A stretch of 64,000 nucleotides of DNA from Entomortierella parvispora E1425 (taxonomy: Eukaryota; Fungi; Mortierellomycota): contig BQFW01000013.1 in NCBI GenBank assembly GCA_020891255.1, forward strand, positions 248,001 to 312,000, in the 5' to 3' direction. Every line of letters starts with the position of its first letter. Within the stretch, counting starts at the first letter, position 1. Below are positions 36,365-52,006 of the stretch, piece after piece. Position numbers and translations under genes: made by a program. The notes below the pieces were generated by a model, which did not search any database, was not told the origin of the DNA, and was given only the letters and a program-made list of their open reading frames with translations.

Positions 36365-39036
36365 ATGAAGTCATTTTCAACTTTGCTCCCAGCTTTTGTC
36401 CTTGCTCTCCTCGCCCTCTCGTCCAACCACAGCACCTGCAACGGTCAACGACAGATTCAGGGCGGCGCCAGGATCCATCAGCGCGAGGAAGCAGTGGGAG
36501 CAACGGCCTCTACTGCTGAGGAGAACAGTGCTGATCTCTTTATTCCCCGGTCGTACCTTCGCCAAACACACCCTCGACGATTGAACCTGTTCGACAACCG
36601 TGCAACTGTCCTCCAAAGGCGTGGTTTGCTCGGTGGTCTGATCCCATCCTCACCACAAGCTGCAGGTAACGATACCCACTCTCATTTTTTTTTTTTTCAG
36701 TTGTGTTTTTATTTATTTTTTCTTTTGGGTACCCGCCTGTGCCTATTGCAATCGTCCAACGATCTGGAAACCCCCCGCCCAAACTTGTTCCCGTTTTTTT
36801 TTTTTTCGTAATGGCTGCATGCACTTGCCTGCAGGCAATCCCTTTCTTCAATTGTGTGACACACCCATTTTGGCCGTTGTATTACGGCCATGGGGGGGGG
36901 GGGGGAACCGCCAGCAGCTGCATCTCCTTTTTGAAAACCAACCCTGGCTCCTGGCGATGTTTAATCTATGTATTCAAACAAGGGGAATCCATATCGCCCC
37001 TCTCTGTGTCTATCTCTCGTTTTGCTGTGTATCTATCCACACACAAACGTGCTCCTCTCTTTTCCCTTCTCTCTGTCTCTTTCTCTTACTCTTATCTCGA
37101 TCTCTCGATGGATTGAGGTCCTCCTTCCTCCCTCTGACTCTGGCTCAGTTTCAGTGTGTCTCCATCTAATCGAGGGATCTTACCCGTTCCTATGATGCTG
37201 GTGGACAGGTGTGGTGAGAGCACACCAAAGAGGGACAGACATTGTTGAGAGCAATTGTTGCAATGGGAGGACAACTTGTGCGCACAGCACTTTGTCTTGT
37301 TGGACAAGAACTGATCGACTCTTGTTCTCTTTCTTTTTTCACGTCTCCAATCCACATTCCCTGGGGGATACGACAAACAAACCAAAACAACAAAACAACA
37401 AAAACAAATCAACAAACACAGACACGTCAACAGCGACCCCACCAGAAAACTCTCCGTCGCTGCCTCCAGTCACGACGGATGAAGTCGCAACAACAGCAAG
37501 TGCGCCTGTCACCCATCCTTCGCCTGAAGGTGTCTCCTCTTCCTCCTCGCCTGAAACCACCCGTAAATGATCCTTCTTCCCTTCACTATCTTTTGTTATC
37601 TTTTTTTTTTTTTTTTTTTTTTTTTTTGGCTTGCTTTGCTCATCAGTTATCCGTTTCTGCGACATCTTGCCTCTGGACTGCTAGACCTGACATCCTCTGA
37701 ACCTCCTTCTCCTTCTCCTCTCATTACTCCGACTACTTCTCATGCAGGTGAAACGACGCCTGAAGTCCTCCCTCCAACGACTCAATCCCCTGAGCCACCC
37801 GTGACAACGGATCCTCCAACGCCACCACCCGTTACAACGGACCCAGTTCCCCCCACCACAGAACCCGTTCCTCCCACGACGGCCGCGACAACTGAAGTGC
37901 CTGTGTCTACCCCCACTGTCACCACCGAGCAACCTACTGTGGCACCCACCACTGCCTCACCCCCTCCTGTGACCTCAGAGCCAACTGTCCCGCCAGTTAA
38001 GACAACGACAACGACCGTGCCTCCTGTGGTGGTTCCTACATCTACAAAGTCGCGTGGACCTGCATCTCCACCAGCAACAACCAATGGCGGAGGCCACGGT
38101 ATTCCTACTGGCTCTGGACGTGATGATCCTTCTTCCACGATGAGCTCTGCAGGTGCAGGTGTTACCCGGCCTGCTGACGCGTCGACCTCTGGTACCAGTT
38201 CTAGCAACAAGACGGCGATCACGATTGGAGTCGTGATTGGTGCCATTGTCGTCTGCGCAGGTATCGGTGTATGGGTCTTTAGAAAGTGGAAGCTGTCGGT
38301 ACGTACTCCTTGTTTAATCCTTCTACTTTTGTTGACTTTGCTACCAAAACACGGTGTCCTGGTTTCTGATATTTTCCTTTTCTTTTTTTTTCCCTTCTAC
38401 TGCTCCTTCTCTCAGCCCTCGAGACAGTTCAAGAGCAAGATTCGAAACTCTTCAAACAATGGGAGCGTTGGCGGACTGGGATCTGGTCGCAGCCTGGAAG
38501 ATGACGATGTCGAATATGCCAATTACACAGATATCTTCCGCCCAACTGCACACGATTCCGCTCTCCCTGTTACGGCTTCGTCCATGACCACGGCCAGCGC
38601 CTCTGCTGCCGCTGTCGGTTCGGGTCAGGGCGCAAATCTTGCCAGAGGAGGATCGGGCTCTGGACCTTCTTCGACCGTTTCTGGATCCTCGCCTCCAATG
38701 CAGCATGCTCAACAGCAAGTCTATTACGATGACCCTTATGGACAGCAAGTCCCTACACAAGCATCCCAGCATCAGCCGCACATGAGTCTTTCCAGCACGG
38801 GCACGGTTCCAGACTATTCTCAGTACCGCTACCCAGGAACACAGCAACCTCTGATGATGAGCGGAGGTCATGGTTATGATTCAGGTGTGACGGGCTCGAT
38901 CCTTGGAGGGGGTGGGGGAGGCCCCGCCGCCTTTACATCGCTGAATGGCTCTCAGGGTCACCAGGCGCACACTTCGTACGCGTCCAGTGACTATCCTGTT
39001 GCAAATGACCACTTTTTGCGCGAGTTGCGCGAATAA
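36365..39036 (+). CDS. Single-pass mucin-like membrane protein (Mid2/Msb2-like architecture)
   Basis: Signal peptide, P/T/S-rich ectodomain, TM AITIGVVIGAIVVCAGIGVWVF followed by RKWK, and a Ser/Gly/Tyr-rich cytosolic tail. Exons join in frame at 36665/37421. Confidence 0.85.
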
Positions 39037-40146: not shown

Positions 40147-40314
40147 AGAAAAAAAATCACCCTGATTTCCTTCCTACCTTCCTATCAACAACCACTCCCC
40201 CTTCCTGGTAACTGTCTGCGATAGATATGGAAAGATGATCGTTTTTCTCTTGCCCACCCAAGTGTCACAGTACGACTGTAAATAAATAACTTTACCAAAA
40301 CAGCAATAAAAAAC

Positions 40315-40397
40315 GGGTCACACGATTTTACTGTTGATTTCTGTATAGAGTTATGAACCTTACGTCTGAGAATGAACGTTGCGTCTGAAAATAGAAT
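40315..40397 (+). repeat. Left terminal inverted repeat (83 bp); TSD ATAAAAAAC at 40306-40314
   Basis: 76/83 identical to the reverse complement of 49586-49668 by manual alignment: 5 mismatches at positions 5-9 and 2 internal. Confidence 0.93.
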
Positions 40398-42104
40398 TGA
40401 CCATTGCTCAAAAAAAAAAAAACTCTGAAAATAGAATCAACCTCTTTGTCTGCTGGATTGGTCTGTGCTGTGGTTTCCCAAGAGGCACTGGCAGCCACTC
40501 GTTGTCAGTGTTCTACTCAAGAAAGAAAAAAACTTACTGTCCTTCGAATGGTCATGGACGTCAAACTGACGTTCTGTTGCTCCTCTTGTCTCTACAAAAT
40601 GGGGCCTGTGCTCGAGCTCACTGAAATGGCACCTTGAATCCCGATCGACTTCTGCCCCCGCCAATCCCTGCCATTCTGACCATTACTACTTCAGCCACAC
40701 TGTTGTCTGCTCACCCATAGGTTCATTTCATCGCCAGGCCAGATCGTAGTTACACCGCTTCCCATCCAGTTCTATTAGGTTCATCATCCACGCTCATACC
40801 CACTACAGGATCTCGTCTACCTTGTAGTATAAACCCCCTTGCCCTTCCTCAGCCTGTAGCTCTCACATACCACATTAATCCTCGTAGTGATTATATGACC
40901 CTTTCCCTTCCACCATCTCTCCTCTGCGTATCCGACTGTGACAGTGAGGCTGATACATGCAGAACCTGTACCTCTTCATCATGCCACTCGATCACATCAA
41001 CCCGTTATTGCGATTACAGGATGCCAACCAAACAACCCACTGCAGGCCACAATAGAAAAATAGAAGAGAGAATGAGATGAAAAGGAGGGGAGAATCATTG
41101 GCAACAGCGAGAAGACTTCGATGCTACGGCTATTTGCGCAATGTGACGGGTTGCAAGCAGCAGCCAGTGTATCCTCGAAATAGAGGCGCCATGAGGGCTA
41201 GAAACCAGATCTACAGTAAGCCTACGGAAGGAGGCTCGCCAAAATCACTGGGGAGCCGACTGCTGCCCTCATTCATTGTGTAGTGTCTTTGGGAAGTTTG
41301 TGCGAGAGTAAAAGCGCGAATATCAGGATATCAGGATACCATGACAAAAAAAAAAAACATTGCCATGCATAGTCTTCCTCCTCTGCCGCTTGACTCCTTC
41401 CTCGATTCCAGACCTACTGGCGCCATAACCCAGGGCGTATACCACAGGCACAACCCCTGCACGGCGTGGGACTATATCTTCCTCCGCCTGTCTTTGGCTA
41501 ACTAAGGTCAACTGTTGTCGCCCCCCTTTCGGTCCTGATCGAGAATCGACACATCAGTATTGCCTGGGGAAGACTTTTTTGACAGTAAAACAAAAAAATC
41601 TATCGTCCTTCCTGTCTTTCCGTTGCAGAATGCTACACCAGTGGCATCTGCCCTGGGCAGACTCGTTAGTCTGCAAAAAAAAAAAAAAAAGATATAGGCC
41701 AATCTGTGCGTTGATCCTAGGATCTCGTGGAAAAAAATGTGCTGCTGCATCCACAAGAGCAAAACCAACTTTGGACACAAATGAATAATTTCTTATTATG
41801 AATTATACCACCAATCACGTGCACACACTACACATCACACGTGACATATAGTGGCTTATCCTCTATTGTTTCATCACAAGCTTCGCCCAAATTGCCATTC
41901 CATCCTCAATTCCCCCGTCCACATCACATTAATTCATGAAGAATTCCAGCACTCACCTCCAGGATTACAGGGATCTCTTTAACTTTTTCAGGGACCCTCC
42001 CAATGCAGCCGATCTAGTTGAAGGAAAAAGAGGTACATAGCTGGTTCTTTTATTTGTCCGAGTTGTATGAGAAACTAGACACCTTCTTAACATATGAGGT
42101 TGTT

Positions 42105-42947
42105 ATGTTGTGGCAGGGGTCTTTCTATGGCAAGGGGATAACGTAGGGAAAGTCAATCCCAAGCACAGTTCCCCAAGATTCCGTCTTCTGCGACCGAAAT
42201 GTAACGGCCAGAACCAGGCATACATTCTGGTCGCTGTAGTGTTCCTTGTCAGGAGATTCCGGGAACTTTTGGACAACCTACCCGGGAAAGATAAAAAAGA
42301 ATTATTCCGGCCTTCTCGAGATGGGTACCTGTTCAGAGATTGGGCCCACGACCTAGGGCATCAAGAGCCAGTTTTTCAGGGAGTGACAGGACAAGCTTAT
42401 TGGTCCATGTACGACCTACTTTTGAAGAAGTATGCCGATTACCAATATATCAGCAGGAACATCGGGAGGGAATACGCGTTCGAGCCAACTATCCTCTTCA
42501 ATTGGGTCAAGGAGCTTTCTGAGCTGAGTGCAACCTATTTCCGTCGTGCTTTTCCGACGTACAAACGCAGTGGCGAAATGTACAGAGCAGGGGGAAATGA
42601 ACAGCAAGAGGATAGAGCGGAAGACGAAGAGAAAAAACGCTCAATCACGGTCACGGTCACGGTCACTATCACGGTCAAGGTCAAGGTCAAGGTCACGGTC
42701 AGTAGAATATGGTGCCATATCAACCACCCTCGCGGATAGGTCGGCCAAACGGATAAAGCTAGATCTCGTCTCTCAGCAATCTGGTAGTTCACGGCCGGCC
42801 TTAGCGGGGTTGGGAAGCGAAACGGATAGAAGTCAACTTCGTTTAGATAGTCTGTCGCCATACATCGGAGAGCAACTTACAGCCATGTCTGACGCGATAT
42901 ACGACCTTTCCCAGAAGGTTATCCAGTTATCACAGCTTTTGCAGTAA
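42105..42947 (+). pseudogene. Second transposon gene: Myb/SANT(trihelix)-like domain, RS tract and C-terminal coiled coil; one frameshift; true start uncertain
   Basis: A splice ataac|gtaggg...gtcag|gagatt gives an in-frame RFRELLDNL...FRDWAHDLG...TGQAYWSMYDLLLKKY. A +1 shift at the A6 run 42632-42637 leads into SRSRSRS...SDAIYDLSQKVIQLSQLLQ. Confidence 0.55.
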
Positions 42948-43525
42948 GTGCTTCAACGTACAACCTAGAGAGTACTCTAGAGAGATATGACTCATGCCCA
43001 TGCCGTCCTGTGATTTGCCTACTAACTGGCATTTCTTCCCATGCCAGCACGGAAGTTCAAACGAGGCCCCCTTTACGGCACGTGCCAATGGCTCCCGTTC
43101 GTTTGCAACCCTGTGAAAAATCCTAATGAGCGATTTCTAGACTGGACGCGGTGAGCACAGGTGGGGTCCCGGAACTGCTCCTTTTGGTATCCTTTCAGTC
43201 TACAGTCATGCCATTGGTCATTGGGTTGGTTCCCGGATGGACGGAGTAACGCGAAATAAAGCCCCGCCTTTCAGCTACTACTGTACTGTACGTATACACT
43301 TTAGTGCTGCTCACTTTCTGGCCTTTGATTTGTTCTCAAGTGATGCTCACATCAAACAGTACCGGAATTAAGCTCCGGCCGGACGACTGCTGCTGCCTCG
43401 CCGCCAGGAAGAACTGCCCAAATTGAAGAAGGCGCCAACTTGCTGATATCTTTTTTCTTCTCTCATTTCTTCATCACCCTTCAACTCTACCCTCATTAGC
43501 TCATTCCAATACACCTTCCTTCACA

Positions 43526-46500
43526 ATGAGCAGAAACCCCCTCTACTCCATCGAAGATATGGATCTCGCGTTGCGAGTCGCTTCAATGGTGAAGGACGCC
43601 AAAATCAATCCCGATAAACTTAGAGAACTTCTCCCTCTAATCAACCGTATTGCTGATCAAGGTGGGGATCGAGAGAGCAAGAGGGCACCCTCCCCATCGC
43701 CTCTGGGAAGAAGCCCCCAGAAGCCTCGAACCGCGAAGAGGGCGAGACGCCTTCTCGCCCTTCCTCCGTCAATTTCTACTTCAGAAGAAGAGTTCCTGAG
43801 CTGGGCAAATCCAAATCGCCGTCTCTCCACCCCTTCTTCCTCTTCTTCTTCGGAGGGTTTTCCCGAGTTTGCGTCGAAAGAAGAGTAAGTAAACATCAGC
43901 TGAACTTTTGAAGCCATTCCTCCTTGTGGCAGTCTACTGAGATTCTTCCTATTCAAAACGTAGAACGCGCGTCAAGCATCAAGATGTCATCACCATCGAG
44001 AGCGACGATGAGTCTCCGTATGTTTCTACTTGTCTTGTTACTGATTTGTACGATCATCATATTAACGTCTAGCCTGTCTTTTTTTTTTTTTTTTTTTTTT
44101 TTTTGCGTAAACGGTTAATAGTGACTCTAAGGTCTGTCGCGAAAAGGACGGTTCGCGACTAAGGTACCAACTAGTGACCGACCTTTGTTCTTTTCATATC
44201 AAGCTCAACTTTCGATATCAAACTGACCATCTGTTTCACCCACTTGTCTATTATTTGCCATTTTCAACGAAGCTACCGCGAAGCAGCCGCTTTTCGTAAG
44301 ACTGACGCTGTTACCCTCCTCGCAGACAGAGAAATTTCAAACACGAGCACTAAACTTACCTTGACGACAACCAGATCTGGGCATGGGTATGTTCAGTTCT
44401 AAAATCTCGAAATGAACGCTTTCCTTGCTAATTTACTCATTATTTCGCCTTTGATCCCGCTTTTCTTTTCTGTCTAGACTTGTGGCAAAGTTTTCGAAAA
44501 GGCTCTCCCCCTCCCCAGTTGCTGCACCTGCTACACTTGCCAAGACCGGAGCTTGTGTGTCTGCCCCGTCAATTGCGCGGTCTATTTCCCCAGTTGCCAG
44601 GTCTGTTTCCCCAGTTGCCAGGTCTGTTTCCCCGTTTAGCACACCTTCAGCGCTCGATAAGACCGTAAATACCGCGCCTGTGGTGCCCACCCCCCCGATT
44701 GCTGCGCCTGTGGTGCCTACCCCCCCAATTGCCGCACCTGTGGTGCCCACCCCCCTGATTGCCGCGCCTGTGGCGCCTGCCCTCCCAGTCGTCGCATCTG
44801 TCAAACCTGCTACTTGCACCAAGTTCGCAATTGACACGGCATCCACTCCTGCGGCCAAACCTATGACCTTACATCCTAATGGATTAAGAAGATCATATTC
44901 TGGGTAAGGGCTTTCATCCCATAAGCACTGTCATCCTTCCTTCATATATCTGAAAGCTGACGTATTCTACTGTGTATAGCCCGCTTCCTGTTTCTCGTCC
45001 TGTTTCTGGCCCTTTTATTGGTCCGATTGCCAAGCTTCCTGTTGCTGGTCCACTTGATGGTCGTCGATTTGCTGGTCATCCATTTGCTGGTCCATATGTT
45101 GGACACCCTGATGCTGGTCCATATGCAGGTCTTGCAGGCCCATTTGCTGGTCATCTTGCTGGCGTCTCTTTTGCTGGTCATCCAGTTGCTGATCCGTTTG
45201 TCTGTTATTACCCCGGCTCTCGTCATGAAGTGAGAAAACCCTGCTCCAGGTATGATGATCAGAAGTTCAATTGACTTTGGTGTGTTCCTTTTTTCTTTCG
45301 ATCTAATCTCTCTTTCTTTTATAGCTCAAATAACCCTATCGTTATTCCAGATGACCTGTAAGTTTTTTTTTTTTTTTTTTTTTGAACGTCGACGACAGTT
45401 CCTTGATCCCAAGCCATGGTGAGGATCGATTGCTAGTGGTCCTAACCGCCATACTCCTATGTTTTATATGCTAGACCTACAATTTCTGTCAGGTATTCGT
45501 TCAAAGATACCCCCGGCGCTTCCTTCCTCGCTAAAAGTGATGGGGTCGGTGCTGAGGACTCACCAAGCGTGGCGCCTGCTCCTACTACAAGAGATACTTC
45601 CGGTACTTCTCATACTTCTGATACTCCTGATGATGTATTTGCGAATGTGGTTAAGTCTCCCTCAACTGGGTATGTTCGCCACTTGATGACGTTTTATGTT
45701 GATCCCTGTCGTCTTTTTTCTGTGTCGTTCTCGTACGTTCCCTGGTATTTATTCAGATTCTTGTCTTTTTTTAGGCTGCATGTCGGTGCTACGCCTGCTG
45801 ACGAGCAGAAACTAAAGTCCTCGAGAGAGGCAGCTTCCTCAGAAAATAGCAGAGGGTATGGATACTACTGCATCTCATCTCGTTCCTCTCGGGGCTATAG
45901 TCTGTCTGCTAACTTTTTTTTTTTAAAAAAACGAATTGTAGAAGCCTCGAGTCAAGCGACGAGTTCCCAAATGGAAACATCAAGTTTAAGCGCAATGTCC
46001 AGGACTATGACACCATTTTACTCGCTCGGAGTGTAGGCTGGGCGACTCAAGTTTACCGGCGCAATATCAAATCTGATGGGTCAATGATCAAAATCCACAA
46101 AAAGTGCCTTGGTATTCTGCGATGCCCAGCTCCTGACTGTCGGTGGGTGCGGCGACCAAAAGTTAATGGACCTGTTGATTACGTCACAGGCGAAACGCGT
46201 ATCGACATGTCGGACACACCCGAGAGCCAATTTTGCGCTATCCACGAGAGAGCTTGAACATCTGCCATGTACAGCTGTCCTGGATTTGGTCGAGGAAGGG
46301 GGATGCATCAAGTTCACCCATCGCGGTTACCATACACATCAGGCACCAATCCCGAAGCGCGCGTCGCAGGATGCGTTGAATTACCTGGAGACGATTGTTT
46401 CTACGGCTCCTGAAAGCAGACCCAAGCACCTTCTCCACAAGACGGAGTTGCGAGACCCCATCAGCCGGAAGTATATGGTATATCGCAATCTCAGCTATGT

Positions 46501-49243
46501 GAGACACCTCCGGAACAAGATCATACACAAGAATCGAAGCGCCAACGACCTTGGTTCGCTAGCGGCTTTGGAGGAAGTGGTCGGGTCCTGCTTCGTAGTG
46601 TCCTCAAGTATTTCATCGTTTGATGGACACATATCAATTGTCATTGACTTTATCCGAGAGCACGCTCAGACACTGGATTCTTCGTTGTCGACGGATTCGA
46701 TTCATGATATTGTAACGGACGACCACTACGCCGATATCTGCGTTACGGTCACCTCGGCCTTCAGTGATTTTTGTTGACCGGACAGTACCGATAACAATGA
46801 CGATCCACCTTGGCAAGACCTCCGAACACTACAAGAAGCATTTCCTGGCCGTATTCGACGTCCTTAATTATCGAGACTGGGACGACTTCGACGAAAACTT
46901 TCCTGGGATGACCTGTGACTTTGCAGATGCAGAGCGAATTGGATTCAAAGACGCTGTTCTTGAGCGTTTTGACATCGCTCCTGAAGACTTCGTTCTCGAG
47001 CGATACTTTGGCTACTGCATTGTCCATTACGAGCGATCGGTAGTCCGGATTCGCAAAAATGGCGCCATTATTCCACCGGGAAAGGAGATGGACTTCTACG
47101 TTGACGCCATGATGCTTGCATCCAGCTCTGTGACCCGCTTCGAGTTCGATAATATGGTAGCCGGATTATTAGAGAGGTTTCCCAAGATCCGCCGTTGGCT
47201 TGACTTCTACCTTCATCAAGATCGTTCCAAGATTATTTTCCCTGCACTTCGGGATGTTGCAGCGAAGGAAACAATCAGTAAAGACACCAACGCCCAGGAG
47301 AGTCTGGGAGGAGACTTCAAGTTATTCGTCAAGCGTACGCACCCAACTTGCTCGATCATCCAGGGGGTCTCAGCGATCGTCAGATACCAGGAGAGCTTCA
47401 TGGAGGACTTCGAATTCGTGTGTCAGGGTGGTGTTCTTCGCTACAAGGACAGCAGGAAGGAAAATCCTACACAGAGGTCTCGATCATCCAGAGAAGGTGC
47501 AAAAAATCGAAGGAAGACTGCTGGGATGAAGTTGCGGGCACAGCACGACAGCTTCGTGCCAAGAAAAGCCACTGGTAAATGTCAAGTACACCAATGACGG
47601 TCGAGCACCGGACACCACCAAGGCCCTTCTTGACGAAGAAACCAACACCAAAGCAAAGGGTGCCAAAAGAAAGCGTGTCATCGAACCCAGGGACACAGGA
47701 AGGGACACCGAAGGCAGAGGTGCAGGACGGCCAAGAGGAAGTCGTAATGTATTGCCCTCCATCAGATCTGTCGGAGATATCGACTGGGATACCTTTGGGA
47801 TCCCATGGAGGAGACAAGAGCCTGTTGCGAATCGATTCACATTCGAGAACAGTTGCCCTGTCGACACAACTTTGATGGCCTGGTTCCTGCTATCAAAATA
47901 TTCTGGGGCGACTCTCCCATCAGCCGTCGCAAGATCAAATGCGGGTCAAACGTTGTTACGAGTTATGGAGGAGATCCGGGCCACACGGTACGACTACGCG
48001 CGAGAGCTGTGGTGCACTGAGGCGATGGAGCTAGCTGGAGATCAGCACCATGACCTCTTCAAGAGTTTGGAGGAGGTATTTCTTGATATTCTACCTGGTT
48101 TGACGCGTTTCGAGACAGTAAGAACGACGGAGTGCACCCGATTGGAATGTCCACAGCGGATCGAAATGTTCACCCCAAGAGCAGTTGTGATGTCGGCCTG
48201 CGCGAGGATTACCCAGAGTTCTTTTGACCAATCATGGACTCGTCAGACTGAGTTTACTTGTTCAACCAAGGTCGACATATCATCTGGGGGTGATTCCGAG
48301 ATGATCGGAGAGGACACAAGAGTGGAGTCGCTGATCAATGTCGATGGAGGGCTTGAGTTTTGGCACGCCTGCGCAGGAGAGAGAAAATCAACAGGGCCGA
48401 TAACTTTGACAACCCATCCCTATATGTTGGTTCTCGACTTCCTTCAATCCGCTTATGAAGTCAATGGAGAAGCAGGACCATGTATACCTCCGGCGTTTCT
48501 GACCATGAACCTCAAGGATTACAAGCGAGCAGCCATAATGTACAGTAACGGGACGCACTTCTGTTGCACGGTCTTTGCTGGTACGGTTGCATTTGTGTAT
48601 GATGGAGCGAGAAGAGGAAGACTCATCCGCAATGTACCAATCAAGTCGGTCACTCATCCCCCCTGGCTACCGAATCATTCATGTTTGGTATATTATTGAG
48701 CGCCCAGACCCGGAGGAGGACTTGTCGCTGATCGCAAAAGATGTCGTTTCGATGGGCTCAAGCAATGGCAGCCCAACTGCAGATGCCGAATCACATAGCA
48801 CCAGTACTGTTGACAGGAGTGATACCAATCCGTGCAAGGAGTCTGCCAAGCCTCAGAAGGGCTCTCCGTCTGTCAGTGCTAATGGCAAGGCCAAGAGTAC
48901 TGCCAGTAGCGAAACCAAGGTGATTGGCACTCGCCGAAGCCAAAGAGGAGAGGTCACTTTGCCACCCTTTCAAGACACTCTCAAGACCCGCCGTAGTAAG
49001 AAGACCTACTACCCTGCTGGTCTTAGTGTTTGTTCTGTCAGCAAGAAAGGGAAGCGGCCTGTTTGCGGTGCTTGCAAGGAAGAGCTCGAGCGCGATAGTC
49101 GCAGGTTTGTTTTTACAACTATCTCGGGGGATGATATTAAGAGAGTAGACAATGTCTCTTACCACTTCAACCACAGCTGCATGGCAGCGCTTCCTGTGGG
49201 CCATCATGCCGAGGCTCAGAATGCGCTAGATAGTGAACTTTGA
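43526..49243 (+). pseudogene. Multidomain transposase gene (low-complexity N-terminus, GCM, MULE DDE, USP-like protease, PARP-type Zn finger); about 10 introns; 4 frameshifts in the last exon
   Basis: The last exon starts at 45942. It contains GCM motifs EFPNGNIKF, GWA, KKCLGILRCPAPDCRWVRRP and FTHRGYHTHQAP; catalytic candidates STDS, TCDF, GYCIVH and TNAQES; NDGRAPDT; NSCPVD with GTHF...YDG; and CGAC...YHFNHSC. Confidence 0.85.
44581..44780 (+). repeat. Coding minisatellites in the transposase N-terminus (21-bp x about 3; 30-bp x about 3.5)
   Basis: TCTGTTTCCCCAGTTGCCAGG repeats encode SVSPVAR; GCGCCTGTGGTGCCCACCCCCCCGATTGCC-type repeats encode APVVPTPPIA. Confidence 0.9.
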
Positions 49244-49585
49244 GCAAAGGAGAGAAGGAAAGAAAGAAGAGAAAGAAGAGAATAAAGCTGGTGATTTTTT
49301 GAACGTCTTTTTGTCTTTTCTGTGAGGCGAGTTTTATTGAGCAAAGTGCGTAAAGTGAAGTTCGAGCCCAACTGTTTACAGCTTGAACAAGTCCAGTCGA
49401 CTATCAAGATGGCTACAAAGCTATATCCCTCTGTCTGTTTTTTCGGTGTCAACAGGCAGCACACACAGGCCAGCTGCTAGTCCTTCGTCGCTGGATTGAG
49501 CCAGGGTTTGGAAGTGGTCTGTGAGTAACGCTGGCATCCCACCCATTCTATTTTCGGCAAACGTTCATTCTCTGGCATCCCACCC

Positions 49586-49668
49586 ATTCTATTTTCAGAC
49601 ACAACGTTCATTCTCAGACGTAAGGTTCATAACTCTATACAGGAATCAACAGTAAAATCTATACACCC
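49586..49668 (-). repeat. Right terminal inverted repeat (83 bp); TSD ATAAAAAAC at 49669-49677
   Basis: Reverse complement reads GGGTGTATAGATTTTACTGTTGATTCCTGTATAGAGTTATGAACCTTACGTCTGAGAATGAACGTTGTGTCTGAAAATAGAAT. Confidence 0.93.
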
Positions 49669-49948
49669 ATAAAAAACCAATGGGAAGTGTCTATAATTCT
49701 TTGGTGTAGATGAAGGAAGACCGTGAGATCAAACTCTCAAGGCCAAAGCGCTGTTGATGTCTCATATTATCATAATCCATCGGCGATTCATTCTTCAGTC
49801 GCCTATTGAGGTTTTTGGTGACAGACGGTGTATTGAATATGAGGAGGGAGAAAGAACCAATGACTATCGATAAAACATGTTGGAAAGAAAAAGAGATGGA
49901 AGTGGAAAGAAAGAAGGGGACGGTAGCGAAGGAATGAGGCAGAGGAGC

Positions 49949-52006
49949 CTAGAGCTCGTCCAAAAGTTTTTCATAATCGTCAATCTTGCTCTGGAGTTGA
50001 ATGCGCTGATCTTTGATTGCACTAGGCTCGACCATGCATTCCAGGTCATCTTCCGTCACCTTTTGCACCATTTCAAAGTAGTCGCCAATCTTTCGGACCA
50101 TATGGCGCTCAATGGTCTGCATGACGACCTTGTCAATGATACGCTCGAGTGCCGTTGTGTTGTATGCAATCAGGCAGGGAACCAGGGCCTTTCTTGTCAA
50201 CAAGTCATTCCAATCGCTCGTTGTCTGTGGAGACTCAAAGTCTCCGTCTGGGATCAGAGACTGTAAAGAAGGGGGTGAAGAACCTGCAACGTCCTTTCCA
50301 GATCCCGAGCTTGAGCTGGCCGCAGAATTGGTTTGCTCGGAGGGAAGAGGGGGGATCTGGTAGTTTTTAGAGCGTTCTCGATGGATGGCCTCCATGTAAT
50401 GTCGGTTCAACGTGAAAGGCGTCTGCTCGTCCTCGAAAATATTGTTAACTTCCAGCTTGATCGCCGTCTCTTGGAGTCGAGAGAACTGACTAAAGATGCG
50501 GGTGAAGACCCTACCAGTAGCACCGTCCGCTGAATGCTTGATGAGGCCACGAAGACCATCCGAGAAAAGACTGTGCATCCTCCCCACGTAGGCATCTGTG
50601 ACTTTTCTCCATTCAGGGAGATAGTGTCCATTGTAGATGTTCTTGAAGATGTAGAAGGAGACAAACCCGGAGGGCTCGTTTCCTTTGTAAAGCGAGATCT
50701 GGTGCTCCAGCATGGCACTGGACACTTTTCGGAGGGCTGGGTCCATCATGCTTGCACGGTACTGATGATAAAGTCTATGCAGGGCCGCTCGAACAAAATG
50801 GGTATCCTCAAGACCTTTCAGGACGACAGTGTTTCCATTCGCGTCCATTTCCTCATGAGAGGTCGGCACAGGCTTTTCCCAGTAGGCGGCAATGTAGGCA
50901 GGGTCATAGTCGGCCACCAAGTAACGGTCAACCTTTCTCAGAATCGACAGGTTGGCACGAGCGACGGCCTCACGCGCAGTATCCTTGTCAGCAATAGCCG
51001 TTCCAAGAGCTTCGAGGTCCCTTTTAAAGTCCTTGACTACCTCGCGTACATCGGCTTTGAAGGAAGGCATTTCGTTCGAGATGTGATGGAAGAGCAATTG
51101 GCTCAAGAAGGCCGTGACGGCCCGACGGCCCTTGCGGTTATCGTCAATGTTGCTCCATTTGCCAGGTCGGAAGAACAGGTCATGTTCTCTCTGACTAGAA
51201 GTCTCCCACGAGTAAGTCTCGCCGGGCAGCTCAGGCTGGTTACTCATCACCAAGTAACCGTGAGCCATCTTCTTGCTCTGGTTACGAATCACACTCATCC
51301 ACTTGTCAAAGCTGACCATCTTGTCTACTTTGGTGATAATGGGGACTGTGCGCTGCCCCAGAGGGTCGTGCGTCTTTGCCACACCCAAGATCTTTGAGTT
51401 TTCGAATTCGACGCTGGCCTGCATGACAGCCAGGATGATGGTGCGAGGGTCGGCAATGTAGCGACTATTGATTTCTTCAATAACCTTGGGGAGGTTCGGA
51501 TCTTCATCATCGCTGACTGTATGGACATAGCCCGGGAGATCGATCAAGGTGAGAGGCGATTGATTGGGACCTGACAACGTAATTTCCAATACTCTCTTCG
51601 AAACAGGCATCTTGCCATCCAAGAGAACCTTGTTGGCACTCTCGATCACGTCTGGAAAGGTCGAAAGACTTGCGCCGGTCGCGTGCAAAAGGTTGAACTT
51701 GTCCTCGCCGTCAATCCGAGCGTACAACACGTCACTTTCCAGGTCTGGATTGTACCGCATGTTCACTTGAATCGCGTACCGGGTGCACATCCCTTCACTG
51801 CGGGGGAAGGGGACCTTTGTGATAGCTTCGAGGACGCTTGACTTGCCGGCGGATTGATCACCTACGATCGCCAGGGAGGGAATGCTGAGCTTGTTGCCCA
51901 AACCACTATGGACCCTGTAGATTCTGTCCATGGTGACTTGATAGCGTGTGTCTCTAAAGACTGCCACTGCTCTGGTGGGGAGGAGGGTGGGATCTGGAGT
52001 AGTCAT
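49949..52006 (-). CDS. Intronless Mx-like dynamin-family GTPase (685 aa)
   Basis: G1 GDQSAGKSS, G2 CTR, G3 DLPG and G4 TKVD, followed by a middle domain and C-terminal GED (QTIERHMV). No PH or PRD domain. Confidence 0.93.
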   Translation of the reverse strand: MTTPDPTLLPTRAVAVFRDTRYQVTMDRIYRVHSGLGNKLSIPSLAIVGDQSAGKSSVLEAITKVPFPRSEGMCTRYAIQVNMRYNPDLESDVLYARIDGEDKFNLLHATGASLSTFPDVIESANKVLLDGKMPVSKRVLEITLSGPNQSPLTLIDLPGYVHTVSDDEDPNLPKVIEEINSRYIADPRTIILAVMQASVEFENSKILGVAKTHDPLGQRTVPIITKVDKMVSFDKWMSVIRNQSKKMAHGYLVMSNQPELPGETYSWETSSQREHDLFFRPGKWSNIDDNRKGRRAVTAFLSQLLFHHISNEMPSFKADVREVVKDFKRDLEALGTAIADKDTAREAVARANLSILRKVDRYLVADYDPAYIAAYWEKPVPTSHEEMDANGNTVVLKGLEDTHFVRAALHRLYHQYRASMMDPALRKVSSAMLEHQISLYKGNEPSGFVSFYIFKNIYNGHYLPEWRKVTDAYVGRMHSLFSDGLRGLIKHSADGATGRVFTRIFSQFSRLQETAIKLEVNNIFEDEQTPFTLNRHYMEAIHRERSKNYQIPPLPSEQTNSAASSSSGSGKDVAGSSPPSLQSLIPDGDFESPQTTSDWNDLLTRKALVPCLIAYNTTALERIIDKVVMQTIERHMVRKIGDYFEMVQKVTEDDLECMVEPSAIKDQRIQLQSKIDDYEKLLDEL

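What the first reader, a model, noticed from the sequence alone, without database searches (positions are those of the whole stretch)
40306..49677. Complete giant Mutator-type transposon with exact boundaries
The termini are GGGT.../...ACCC with 83-bp TIRs, and the flanking 9-bp TSD ATAAAAAAC is perfect, which are Mutator hallmarks. At 9.35 kb it carries two genes and a decayed left arm, and sits between a CsbD gene and an Mx-like GTPase. The intact TSD and near-identical inner TIR (72/74) imply a recent insertion, yet TIR positions 5-9 differ completely (CACAC vs GTATA). It appears to be a full-length representative of a poorly described GCM-MULE family in an early-diverging fungus.
Basis: partly seen in the sequence, partly recalled or inferred. 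Interest (0 to 1): 0.85.

Follow-up and report, generated by a model that had tools for sequence, protein, structure and literature searches.

The report
Young GCM-type Mutator (MuDRF) transposon copy
This is a real, very recently inserted 9.35-kb cut-and-paste transposon of the already described MuDRF (GCM-domain) branch of the Mutator superfamily in the soil fungus Entomortierella parvispora. It is ordinary as an insertion, but its transposase carries a deubiquitinase-like domain and a DNA-break-type zinc finger, and the element has a conserved accessory gene and conserved unequal ends.

Summary
Window 40315-49668 (9,354 bp) begins GGGT and ends ACCC. It has 83-bp inverted ends (76/83 matched; only positions 5-9 differ completely) and a perfect 9-bp duplication, ATAAAAAAC. 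The genome (E. parvispora E1425) holds at least three more copies with the same ends. Two of them are 99.9% identical and have their own perfect 9-bp duplications; one splits a Sel1 gene. In a related taxon the flanking CsbD and dynamin genes lie 349 bp apart with no element.

The element belongs to MuDRF (Cantu 2011): a GCM DNA-binding domain, a Mutator/IS256-type DDE domain and a 9-bp duplication. The scan has already reported this family on other pieces of this genome (s1-185078, s1-176298).

New here:
- The CACAC/GTATA end mismatch is conserved in a relative whose transposase is only 52% identical, so it is a built-in asymmetry, not decay.
- A 239-aa accessory gene and an N-terminal module are conserved in that relative.
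- The transposase continues into a USP-fold domain with an invariant Cys/His/Asp and a PARP-like zinc finger.

As assembled, this copy's transposase frame is broken four times at short simple runs. These are probably residual Nanopore errors, but that was not tested. Only the older copy (L004) reads through.

The parts
40306..40314 (.). Left copy of the 9-bp target-site duplication ATAAAAAAC
   Evidence: identical 9-mer on both sides of the element.
40315..40397 (+). Left terminal inverted repeat (starts GGGTCACAC)
   Evidence: 76/83 match to the right arm; identical terminus in all four genomic copies; the first 15 nt are identical in the relative L002.
40385..40437 (+). Two copies of the subterminal motif CTGAAAATAGAAT (40385-40397 and 40425-40437); candidate transposase binding sites
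   Evidence: four good copies in the window, all in the two arms, about 40 bp apart and in inverted orientation between the arms. A binding role is inferred.
41936..42739 (+). Accessory gene A (239 aa, P0193 = EMPS_09313, one intron); function unknown
   Evidence: Conserved in the relative L002 (BLASTP E 1e-28). No Pfam or Atlas match.
43487..43885 (+). Conserved N-terminal module: first large exon of the 1582-aa gene model, or possibly a separate gene
   Evidence: exon map of P0164; 51% identity over 75 aa to L002:7681-8253, E 2e-16.
44482..45274 (+). Pro/Ala/Gly-rich low-complexity coding repeats (21-, 30- and 15-bp tandem units) inside the predicted N-terminal part
   Evidence: Not conserved in L002.
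45943..49243 (+). Last large exon of the transposase gene (residues 484-1582 of the intact homologue P0164); an uninterrupted 1,099 codons in copy L004
45991..46366 (+). GCM-type zinc DNA-binding domain
   Evidence: family profile against mouse GCM1 (1odh), E 9.8e-12; 1odh, TM 0.55 by target; human GCMb.
46440..47580 (+). DDE catalytic domain of Mutator/IS256 type: D at 46694, D at 46917, C..H at 47016-47027, E at 47298
   Evidence: D, C and H invariant, and the first D and the E at least 90%, in 86 relatives; model pLDDT 92; matches to FAR1/FHY3, ALPHA3, NOF, IS256-family, ISCth4 and Atlas MULE clusters.
47745..48725 (+). USP-fold (ubiquitin-specific-protease-like) domain: Cys 47854, His 48556, Asp 48601
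   Evidence: USP18/USP1/USP7/USP14, E about 1e-9, probability 1.0. Cys 21/21, His 18/18, Asp/Asn 18/18 among aligned relatives.
49040..49225 (+). C-terminal C-x2-C...H-x4-C zinc finger, PARP-type-like (Cys 49064 and 49073, His 49163, Cys 49178)
   Evidence: a source labels it 'PARP-type domain'. PARP1 fingers are the best PDB hits, E 0.002. Pfam zf-PARP in 7 of 23 relatives, best E 0.008. Ligands invariant.
46246..46252 (+). Frame break 1: a GA-repeat 2 nt shorter than in copies L004 and L005
46768..46772 (+). Frame break 2: T5 here, T4 in the intact copy L004
47564..47567 (+). Frame break 3: A4 here and in L005, A3 in L001 and L004
48658..48663 (+). Frame break 4: C6 here, C5 in L004. The annotators' model for the L001 copy (P0001) skips the equivalent site with an artificial intron, which corresponds to window 48581-48707
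49545..49598 (-). Two copies of the subterminal 13-nt motif in the right arm, inside a 41-bp tandem duplication (49531-49615)
49586..49668 (-). Right terminal inverted repeat (reverse complement starts GGGTGTATA)
49669..49677 (.). Right copy of the 9-bp target-site duplication ATAAAAAAC

Best explanation
Window 40315-49668 is one of at least four copies of a MuDRF-type (GCM-domain) Mutator-superfamily DNA transposon in Entomortierella parvispora E1425. It was cut and pasted very recently into the AT-rich spacer between the 3' ends of a CsbD gene and a dynamin-family gene, and it duplicated 9 bp on insertion.

Shown here:
- The ends, the TSD and the copy set.
- The domain order of the transposase: GCM DNA-binding domain, then a Mutator/IS256-type DDE nuclease (D-D-E plus CxxH), then a USP-fold domain with an invariant Cys/His/Asp, then a PARP-like zinc finger.
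- A conserved upstream accessory gene.
- A conserved difference between the left end (GGGT-CACAC) and the right end (GGGT-GTATA).

Inferred:
- The GCM domain binds the repeated 13-nt motifs in both arms.
- The DDE domain excises and reinserts the element as in characterised MULEs.
- The unequal terminal 9-mers let the transposase tell left from right.
- The zinc finger and the USP-like domain act on the broken DNA or on ubiquitin-type marks around it.

As assembled, this copy's transposase frame is broken four times at short simple runs. I consider residual Nanopore consensus errors the more likely cause (about 0.6-0.65). Otherwise this copy is non-autonomous and was moved by an intact copy such as L004.
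For: - Ends and TSD.
- Further copies in the same genome: L001, L004 and L005 have identical termini. L001 has TSD ATATTAAAC and L005 has ATAAACTGT. The three young copies differ by one substitution in 9.35 kb.
- The L001 copy splits a Sel1-repeat gene.
- In a related taxon (L007, dynamin 82% identical) CsbD and dynamin lie tail to tail, 349 bp apart. In the window the distance is 439 bp once the element and one TSD are removed.
- Another sample of the species holds only 6% of the words of 44001-50000, which equals the share of the 332-bp flank.
- GCM domain: 1odh, E 9.8e-12.
- DDE domain: invariant D, C and H, and near-invariant D and E. The model has pLDDT 92. Matches include FAR1/FHY3/FRS, K. 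lactis ALPHA3, Drosophila NOF, ZSWIM and ten IS256-family transposases. ISCth4 is the best PDB hit. Atlas clusters carrying PF10551 MULE give TM 0.59-0.72 over 400-480 residues.
- USP fold and triad.
- Zinc finger.
- Relatives P0002, P0151 and P0152 (the last a continuous 1175-aa ORF) and P0164 (L004) read through all four break sites.
- Conserved accessory gene and N-terminal module in L002.
- Conserved end asymmetry in L002.
- MuDRF definition (GCM + DDE, 9-bp TSD): PMC3164196.
- Assembly method (Nanopore, SMARTdenovo, Nanopolish, Pilon): PMC8759367.
Against: - No Pfam model, including PF10551 MULE, PF03615 GCM and UCH, reaches E 0.01-1 on this protein or on nine relatives. Membership therefore rests on a profile-to-PDB hit and on fold comparison.
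- In the PDB, ISCth4 (Z 11.9) is only slightly ahead of Hermes and retroviral integrase cores (Z 10-11).
- The older copy L004 has no matching TSD.
- I got no read-level or RNA evidence. The frame breaks, the splicing of the N-terminal part and transcription are all untested.
- No same-species empty site was seen at nucleotide level. In L007 the spacer does not align at the insertion point.
- Two of the four breaks are shared by all three young copies. That fits real mutations as well as systematic errors.
Confidence: 0.9

Rival explanations
1. The four frame breaks are real. This copy, like L001 and L005, would be a dead, non-autonomous element that was mobilised in trans by an intact copy such as L004.
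For: T5 and C6 are shared by all three young copies. The GA deletion and A4 are each shared by two. L004 alone is intact. Trans-mobilisation of defective copies is common in Mutator systems (established knowledge).
Against: Among the three young copies there is 1 substitution against about 13 indels, all in homopolymer or dinucleotide runs. These indels group the copies in all three mutually incompatible ways: win+L001, win+L005 and L001+L005. No single history explains that. The assembly is Nanopore-based and polished with Pilon. By inference, Pilon cannot correct near-identical repeats, whereas the 1-1.5% diverged L004 can be corrected. Earlier notes on other repeats of this genome also report one-base frameshifts 'as assembled'.
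Confidence: 0.33
2. It is a TIR transposon of another superfamily (hAT, P, Transib and so on), or a new one, that merely shares a 9-bp TSD and an RNase-H-like core with Mutator.
For: There is no Pfam MULE hit. PDB Z-scores to Hermes and integrases are close to that for ISCth4.
Against: The top 30 Swiss-Prot fold matches are almost all MULE-derived or IS256-family proteins, aligned over 300-550 residues. Atlas neighbours carry PF10551, PF00872, SWIM or FAR1 with TM up to 0.72. The CxxH motif after the second D is invariant. The TSD is 9 bp in four elements. A GCM/WRKY-type N-terminal domain is typical of MULEs (PMC1702500; PMC3164196).
Confidence: 0.04
3. The 9.35 kb is a composite: a Pack-MULE-like capture or a nested insertion. 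On this reading the left half (gene A and the N-terminal module) is host DNA or another element rather than part of this transposon.
For: The left 5.6 kb has no recognisable domains and contains low-complexity repeats.
Against: The same order (gene A, N-terminal module, transposase) between the same kind of ends is kept in L002, whose transposase is only 52% identical. Gene A has no homologue outside the element copies. There is no internal TIR pair or internal TSD.
Confidence: 0.03

Closest known systems
MuDRF elements (Repbase MuDRF-1..3_PSt and others; Cantu et al. 2011, PMC3164196)
   Same: GCM-type DNA-binding domain N-terminal to a distant Mutator-type DDE domain; 9-bp TSD; TIRs; found in fungi. 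There are weak but significant sequence hits to Melampsora larici-populina proteins (E 4e-11 to 2e-7), and MuDRF is reported in that species.
   Different: MuDRF was described from Basidiomycota and Naegleria as encoding one protein. Here the host is a Mortierellomycota fungus and the element is 9.35 kb. It has a conserved 239-aa accessory gene and a long N-terminal extension. The transposase is shown to continue into a USP-fold domain and a PARP-like zinc finger. I could not establish whether basidiomycete MuDRFs also have these two domains (hhalign probability 1.2%; HMM E 1.6-3.2). Repbase itself could not be searched.
Maize MuDR, mosquito Muta1 and classical MULEs
   Same: Long TIRs, 9-bp TSD, a DDE transposase with the CxxH signature, a WRKY/GCM-class zinc DNA-binding domain, and in MuDR a second gene. 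The likely chemistry is cut-and-paste as shown for Muta1 (PMC5499845).
   Different: There is no sequence-level Pfam MULE match and no SWIM domain was detected. The accessory gene is unrelated to mudrB as far as can be told. The termini are deliberately unequal at positions 5-9.
Protease-carrying MULEs: KI-MULE/VANDAL (Ulp1) and Medicago OTU-fused MULEs (PMC1702500)
   Same: A papain-like cysteine protease of the ubiquitin/ubiquitin-like system is attached to, or carried with, a Mutator transposase.
   Different: Here the protease is of the USP (C19) fold, not Ulp1 (C48) or OTU. It lies C-terminal in the same ORF and is followed by a PARP-like finger.
Drosophila FB-NOF 120.7 kDa protein (P16320)
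   Same: In the fold search its residues 109-678 match the GCM+DDE model and its residues 765-1056 match the USP-like domain. The order is the same: DDE, then USP-like.
   Different: Identity is very low (9-10%). It sits within Foldback arms, not simple TIRs. The match is between predicted structures only.
IS256-family bacterial transposases (ISCth4, 6xgx/6xg8)
   Same: Best solved-structure match of the catalytic domain (Foldseek E 2e-6; VIA Z 11.9 over 235 residues).
   Different: Prokaryotic, about 400 aa, with no GCM, USP or zinc-finger modules.

Membership tests
Mutator (MuDR/MULE) superfamily | Target-site duplication of 8-10 bp, typically 9 | tested here: met
   Perfect 9-bp TSDs in the window, L001 and L005 and in the distant relative L003. 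L004 has none.
Mutator (MuDR/MULE) superfamily | Terminal inverted repeats of tens to hundreds of bp | tested here: met
   83-bp arms, 76/83 matched, plus repeated subterminal motifs.
Mutator (MuDR/MULE) superfamily | DDE catalytic domain homologous to MULE/IS256 transposases, with the C/DxxH signature after the second D | tested here: met
   Invariant D, C and H and near-invariant D and E in 86 relatives. Fold matches to FAR1/FHY3, ALPHA3, NOF, ZSWIM, IS256-family proteins, ISCth4 and Atlas PF10551 clusters. The Pfam HMM PF10551 does not detect it. The original MuDRF description likewise needed four PSI-BLAST rounds.
MuDRF branch | GCM (glial cells missing) type DNA-binding domain in the transposase | tested here: met
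   Profile of 86 relatives against mouse GCM1 (1odh), E 9.8e-12. Foldseek: 1odh, TM 0.55 by target. Human GCMb.
MuDRF branch | Direct sequence relationship to the deposited MuDRF consensus sequences | tested here: inconclusive
   Repbase is not available. Indirect evidence only: E 4e-11 to 2e-7 to three Melampsora larici-populina proteins, and the best Atlas fold neighbour is a Basidiomycota cluster (TM 0.72).
USP (C19) deubiquitinase fold (domain level) | USP palm/thumb/fingers fold with a Cys-His-Asp/Asn triad | tested here: met
   Domain pLDDT above 90. USP18/1/7/14 at E about 1e-9, TM about 0.5 by target. Cys 21/21, His 18/18, Asp/Asn 18/18; four conserved Cys fit a fingers zinc site. No Pfam UCH hit. 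Enzyme activity is not testable here.
PARP-type zinc finger (domain level) | C-x2-C-x(28-30)-H-x2-C finger matching zf-PARP | tested here: inconclusive
   The ligands are invariant but the spacing is H-x4-C. PARP1 fingers are the best PDB hits at E 0.002. Pfam zf-PARP matches 7 of 23 relatives, best E 0.008, below the curated cut-off. A source labels the 203-aa fragment 'PARP-type domain'.
Pack-MULE or other non-autonomous cargo carrier | Internal region made of captured host gene fragments, with no transposase | tested here: not met
   A full transposase gene is present. Gene A has no homologue outside the element copies and is conserved in position in L002.

The most novel reading that the evidence does not exclude
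This Mortierellaceae MuDRF lineage may be a multi-enzyme transposon. On this reading the transposase combines a DDE nuclease with a catalytically active USP-type isopeptidase and a PARP-like DNA-break-sensing finger. These would act at the transposition-induced break, for example by removing ubiquitin-type marks from chromatin or repair factors. The lineage also keeps a dedicated accessory gene and functionally distinct left and right ends. The DDE-then-USP-like order also appears in Drosophila FB-NOF. The closest structural relative of the USP-like domain is mammalian DRIP1 (Swiss-Prot Q4KL13/Q4W4Y0). The architecture would then be ancient and would have been domesticated at least once.
Probability: 0.3. 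Interest if true: 0.7.

Novelty: new variant of a known kind. Interest (0 to 1): 0.45.

Why it matters
As an insertion it is ordinary: a young Mutator-type element in a 3' intergenic spacer. Its value is as a clean, multi-copy and apparently still mobile reference for MuDRF. That branch is invisible to Pfam and is described only briefly, in one 2011 paper and in Repbase.

The data define several things that are directly testable:
- exact ends and candidate binding motifs;
- an evolutionarily conserved left/right end asymmetry;
- a conserved accessory gene;
- a transposase that carries a probably active USP-type protease and a PARP-like finger.

These bear on how eukaryotic transposases deal with chromatin and DNA-damage signalling. 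I found no paper that describes this domain combination.

There is also a practical point. In this Nanopore-based assembly, near-identical repeats carry homopolymer indels. 'Frameshifted' transposon genes elsewhere in this genome should therefore not be taken at face value.

Tried and rejected
There is therefore no read-level check of the junctions or the frame breaks.
- No RNA run was listed for the transposase gene.
- Pfam gave nothing on the window ORFs, the full-length homologues or the Melampsora proteins.
- The Atlas feature search of gene A returned noise only (best score 0.40). The homologue search for gene A found only the element's own copies.
- Exact look-ups of the flanking proteins found only this genome. 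The 685-aa dynamin ORF was not on record, and CsbD was found only in BQFW01000013.1. The dynamin cluster has no second isolate. A same-species empty site could therefore not be fetched.
- The metagenome scan with the shared 15-nt left terminus returned 120 loci. None encodes the transposase or gene A and none extends the TIR, so all are chance matches.
- Profile comparisons of the USP-like domain with Melampsora MuDRF-like proteins were not significant.
- I first thought the TSDs shared an AT...C pattern (ATAAAAAAC, ATATTAAAC, ATTTTTTTC). The third genomic copy (ATAAACTGT) and the L002 left flank (TTTGTTTAA) do not support the final C. Only AT-richness holds, with a leading ATA in three of three E. 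parvispora copies.
- The genome-contig collection was not used because it holds only bacteria and archaea.
Full report
**Observation**

- ATAAAAAAC lies at 40306-40314 and at 49669-49677.
- Between the two copies, a 9,354-bp segment starts GGGTCACACGATTTT and ends with the reverse complement of GGGTGTATAGATTTT.
- The two 83-nt arms match at 76 of 83 positions. Positions 1-4 are identical, positions 5-9 all differ, and 10-83 match at 72/74.
- A 36-nt inner-arm pattern occurs only at these two places in the 64-kb window; none was expected by chance.
- There is no tRNA gene nearby.
- The neighbours are a CsbD gene (PF05532) and a dynamin-family GTPase (PF00350/PF01031), arranged tail to tail.

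**Where it comes from and other copies**

A 277-aa ORF from the element found an identical 772-aa protein of Entomortierella parvispora (EMPS_07363). The window is BQFW01000013.1 of assembly GCA_020891255.1. Cluster members and exact look-ups gave three more copies in the same genome.

All four copies start and end at the same bases and carry the same CACAC/GTATA difference.
- L001:3520-12871 has the TSD ATATTAAAC and splits a Sel1-repeat gene. Sel1 repeats lie on both sides on the minus strand.
- L005:1685-11037 has the TSD ATAAACTGT.
- L004:6963-16171 is older: 98.5-99.4% identical, with a 172-bp deletion. It has no matching TSD, so its flanks were probably rearranged. It lies within 35 kb of a contig end, next to another GCM-like fragment.

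The window, L001 and L005 differ from each other by a single substitution (49220) in 9.35 kb. The boundaries and the 9-bp TSD are thus confirmed by independent insertions, and the insertions are very young.

**Empty site**

No second isolate could be fetched. Two indirect results agree with an insertion.
- Another sample of the same species label (run X3) holds 6% of the sampled words of 44001-50000. That is the share of the 332-bp flank.
- A metagenome contig from a related taxon (L007; dynamin 82% identical) has CsbD and dynamin tail to tail with 349 bp between the stop codons. In the window the distance is 439 bp once the element and one TSD are removed. The spacer itself does not align at the insertion point.

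**What it encodes**

Intact relatives show that one reading frame runs through four domains. These relatives are P0002 (1070 aa), P0151 (1062 aa), P0152 (a continuous 1175-aa ORF on L002) and P0164 (1582 aa, the model for copy L004). No Pfam model detects any part of it. More sensitive tests are clear.

1. *GCM domain.* A profile of 86 relatives hits the mouse GCM1 DNA-binding domain (1odh) at E 9.8e-12. The predicted structure matches 1odh (TM 0.55 by target) and human GCMb.
2. *DDE domain.* D735, D809 and E936 plus C842-x2-H845 (P0164 numbering) are invariant or nearly so. The model has mean pLDDT 92. Its closest Swiss-Prot fold matches are almost all Mutator-derived or IS256-family proteins: FAR1/FHY3/FRS, K. 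lactis ALPHA3, Drosophila NOF, ZSWIM proteins, IS256, IS1081, IS406 and ISRM3. The best solved structure is the IS256-family ISCth4 transposase. Atlas clusters whose members carry PF10551 MULE align over 400-480 residues at TM 0.59-0.72.
3. *USP-like domain.* Residues about 1085-1410 fold as a USP (USP18/1/7/14, E about 1e-9, probability 1.0). The Cys, His and Asp/Asn that correspond to the catalytic triad are present in every aligned relative.
4. *Zinc finger.* The last 80 residues form a C-x2-C...H-x4-C finger with invariant ligands. The best PDB matches are the PARP1 fingers (E 0.002). Pfam zf-PARP is reached weakly in 7 of 23 relatives, and one source labels the fragment 'PARP-type'. I regard this assignment as likely but not established.

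GCM + DDE + a 9-bp TSD is the published definition of MuDRF, a distant Mutator branch named by Cantu et al. 2011 from rust fungi, other Basidiomycota and Naegleria (PMC3164196). The weak but significant hits to Melampsora larici-populina proteins fit this.

**The left half**

The left 5.6 kb is not decayed filler. A 239-aa gene (P0193, window 41936-42739) and a module at 43487-43885 are conserved, in the same order, in L002 (E 1e-28 and 2e-16). That relative's transposase is only 52% identical. Gene A has no homologue outside the element copies and no recognisable domain, so its function is unknown.

AUGUSTUS joins the N-terminal module and a Pro-rich repeat region to the transposase exon, giving 1582 aa. 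Without RNA data I cannot say whether this is one gene or two.

**The ends**

L002 contains a nearly complete 10.67-kb relative.
- Its left end starts with the same 15 nt as the window's element (GGGTCACACGATTTT).
- Its right end, cut one base short by the contig end, reads (G)GGTGTATTGAAAAG in reverse complement.
- The inner arms have diverged, yet the left CACAC versus right GTAT(A/T) difference is kept.

Other relatives fit the pattern.
- A third relative (L008) ends GGGTATAAT..., followed by an AT-rich flank.
- A 31%-identical one-gene relative (L003:3858-8531, 4.67 kb) has the TSD ATTTTTTTC. It has GGGT/GAGT termini with its own mismatch patch at positions 10-15.

Each arm of the window's element also carries two copies of CTGAAAATAGAAT about 40 bp apart. 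These are candidate binding sites for the GCM domain (inference). All observed target 9-mers are AT-rich.

**State of this copy**

Relative to the intact relatives, the window copy changes frame four times:
- a GA-repeat 2 nt short at 46246-46252;
- T5 instead of T4 at 46768;
- A4 instead of A3 at 47564;
- C6 instead of C5 at 48658.

The annotated fragments (656, 266 and 203 aa) and the artificial intron in P0001 are consequences of these breaks.

Among the three young copies there is 1 substitution against about 13 indels. All the indels are in homopolymer or dinucleotide runs. They group the copies in all three mutually incompatible pairings.

The assembly was made from Nanopore reads (SMARTdenovo, Nanopolish) and polished with Pilon (PMC8759367). 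By inference, short-read polishing fails in near-identical repeats but works on the diverged L004, and L004 is the only copy with an intact 1,099-codon exon.

I therefore think that most or all of the breaks are assembly artefacts (about 0.6-0.65).

**Comparison and verdict**

The element meets every testable defining feature of the Mutator superfamily and of MuDRF. The scan had already reported sister copies of this element:
- s1-185078, the Sel1 insertion, which I re-derived as L001;
- s1-176298 and s1-182033, the USP/PARP fusion.

The lineage differs from the published description of MuDRF in four ways:
- its host phylum;
- its size;
- a conserved accessory gene with an N-terminal module;
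- the demonstrated USP-fold and PARP-like domains.

Protease-carrying MULEs are known with Ulp1 or OTU domains (PMC1702500). I found no paper on a USP-type fusion. Whether basidiomycete MuDRFs also have these domains remains open.

The insertion itself is ordinary. The family architecture is moderately interesting.

Noticed in passing
window 47745-48725 (USP-like domain); fold-search: The USP-like domain is structurally closest to mammalian 'Dopamine receptor-interacting protein 1' (Q4KL13/Q4W4Y0, 310 aa; E 1e-14, TM 0.58-0.61 by hit). It also matches the C-terminus (765-1056) of the Drosophila FB-NOF protein P16320, whose residues 109-678 match the DDE part. This hints at an old DDE+USP-like Mutator architecture and a possible domesticated relic in vertebrates.
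   Followed up: no
L004:6963-16171 and flanks: The only copy with an intact transposase frame has no matching 9-bp duplication (left flank CTAAAATAA, right flank GTTATCAAA). It lies within 35 kb of a contig end. A separate GCM-like fragment sits at L004:1386-1598. This suggests a rearranged, repeat-rich region.
   Followed up: partly
L003:3858-8531 (JGI metagenome contig Ga0495653_0002762): A complete 4.67-kb one-gene relative (transposase P0158, 31% identical). It has the perfect TSD ATTTTTTTC, termini GGGT.../...ACTC, and a mismatch patch at positions 10-15 of otherwise well-matched arms. It lies next to a tubulin gene.
   Followed up: partly
L002:3278-13946 (ENA contig_106176): A nearly complete 10.67-kb relative with the same gene order and the same first 15 nt at the left end. 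Its transposase is one uninterrupted 1175-aa ORF that even reads through an in-frame intron.
   Followed up: partly
window, L001 and L005 copies: Near-identical repeat copies in this Nanopore/Pilon assembly differ almost only by homopolymer and dinucleotide-run indels. Frameshifts reported in other repeated genes of this genome may have the same cause.
   Followed up: partly
window 49243-49285: An AG-rich simple repeat (AAAGAAGAG units) right after the transposase stop made read laying refuse the whole stretch.
   Followed up: no
window 37567-39036 (+): A long ORF upstream of CsbD encodes a Pro/Thr/Ser-rich protein with a hydrophobic segment, which looks like a mucin-type membrane protein. P0164's Pro-rich part gives a weak tblastn hit to it (E 0.001), most likely from composition alone.
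   Followed up: no
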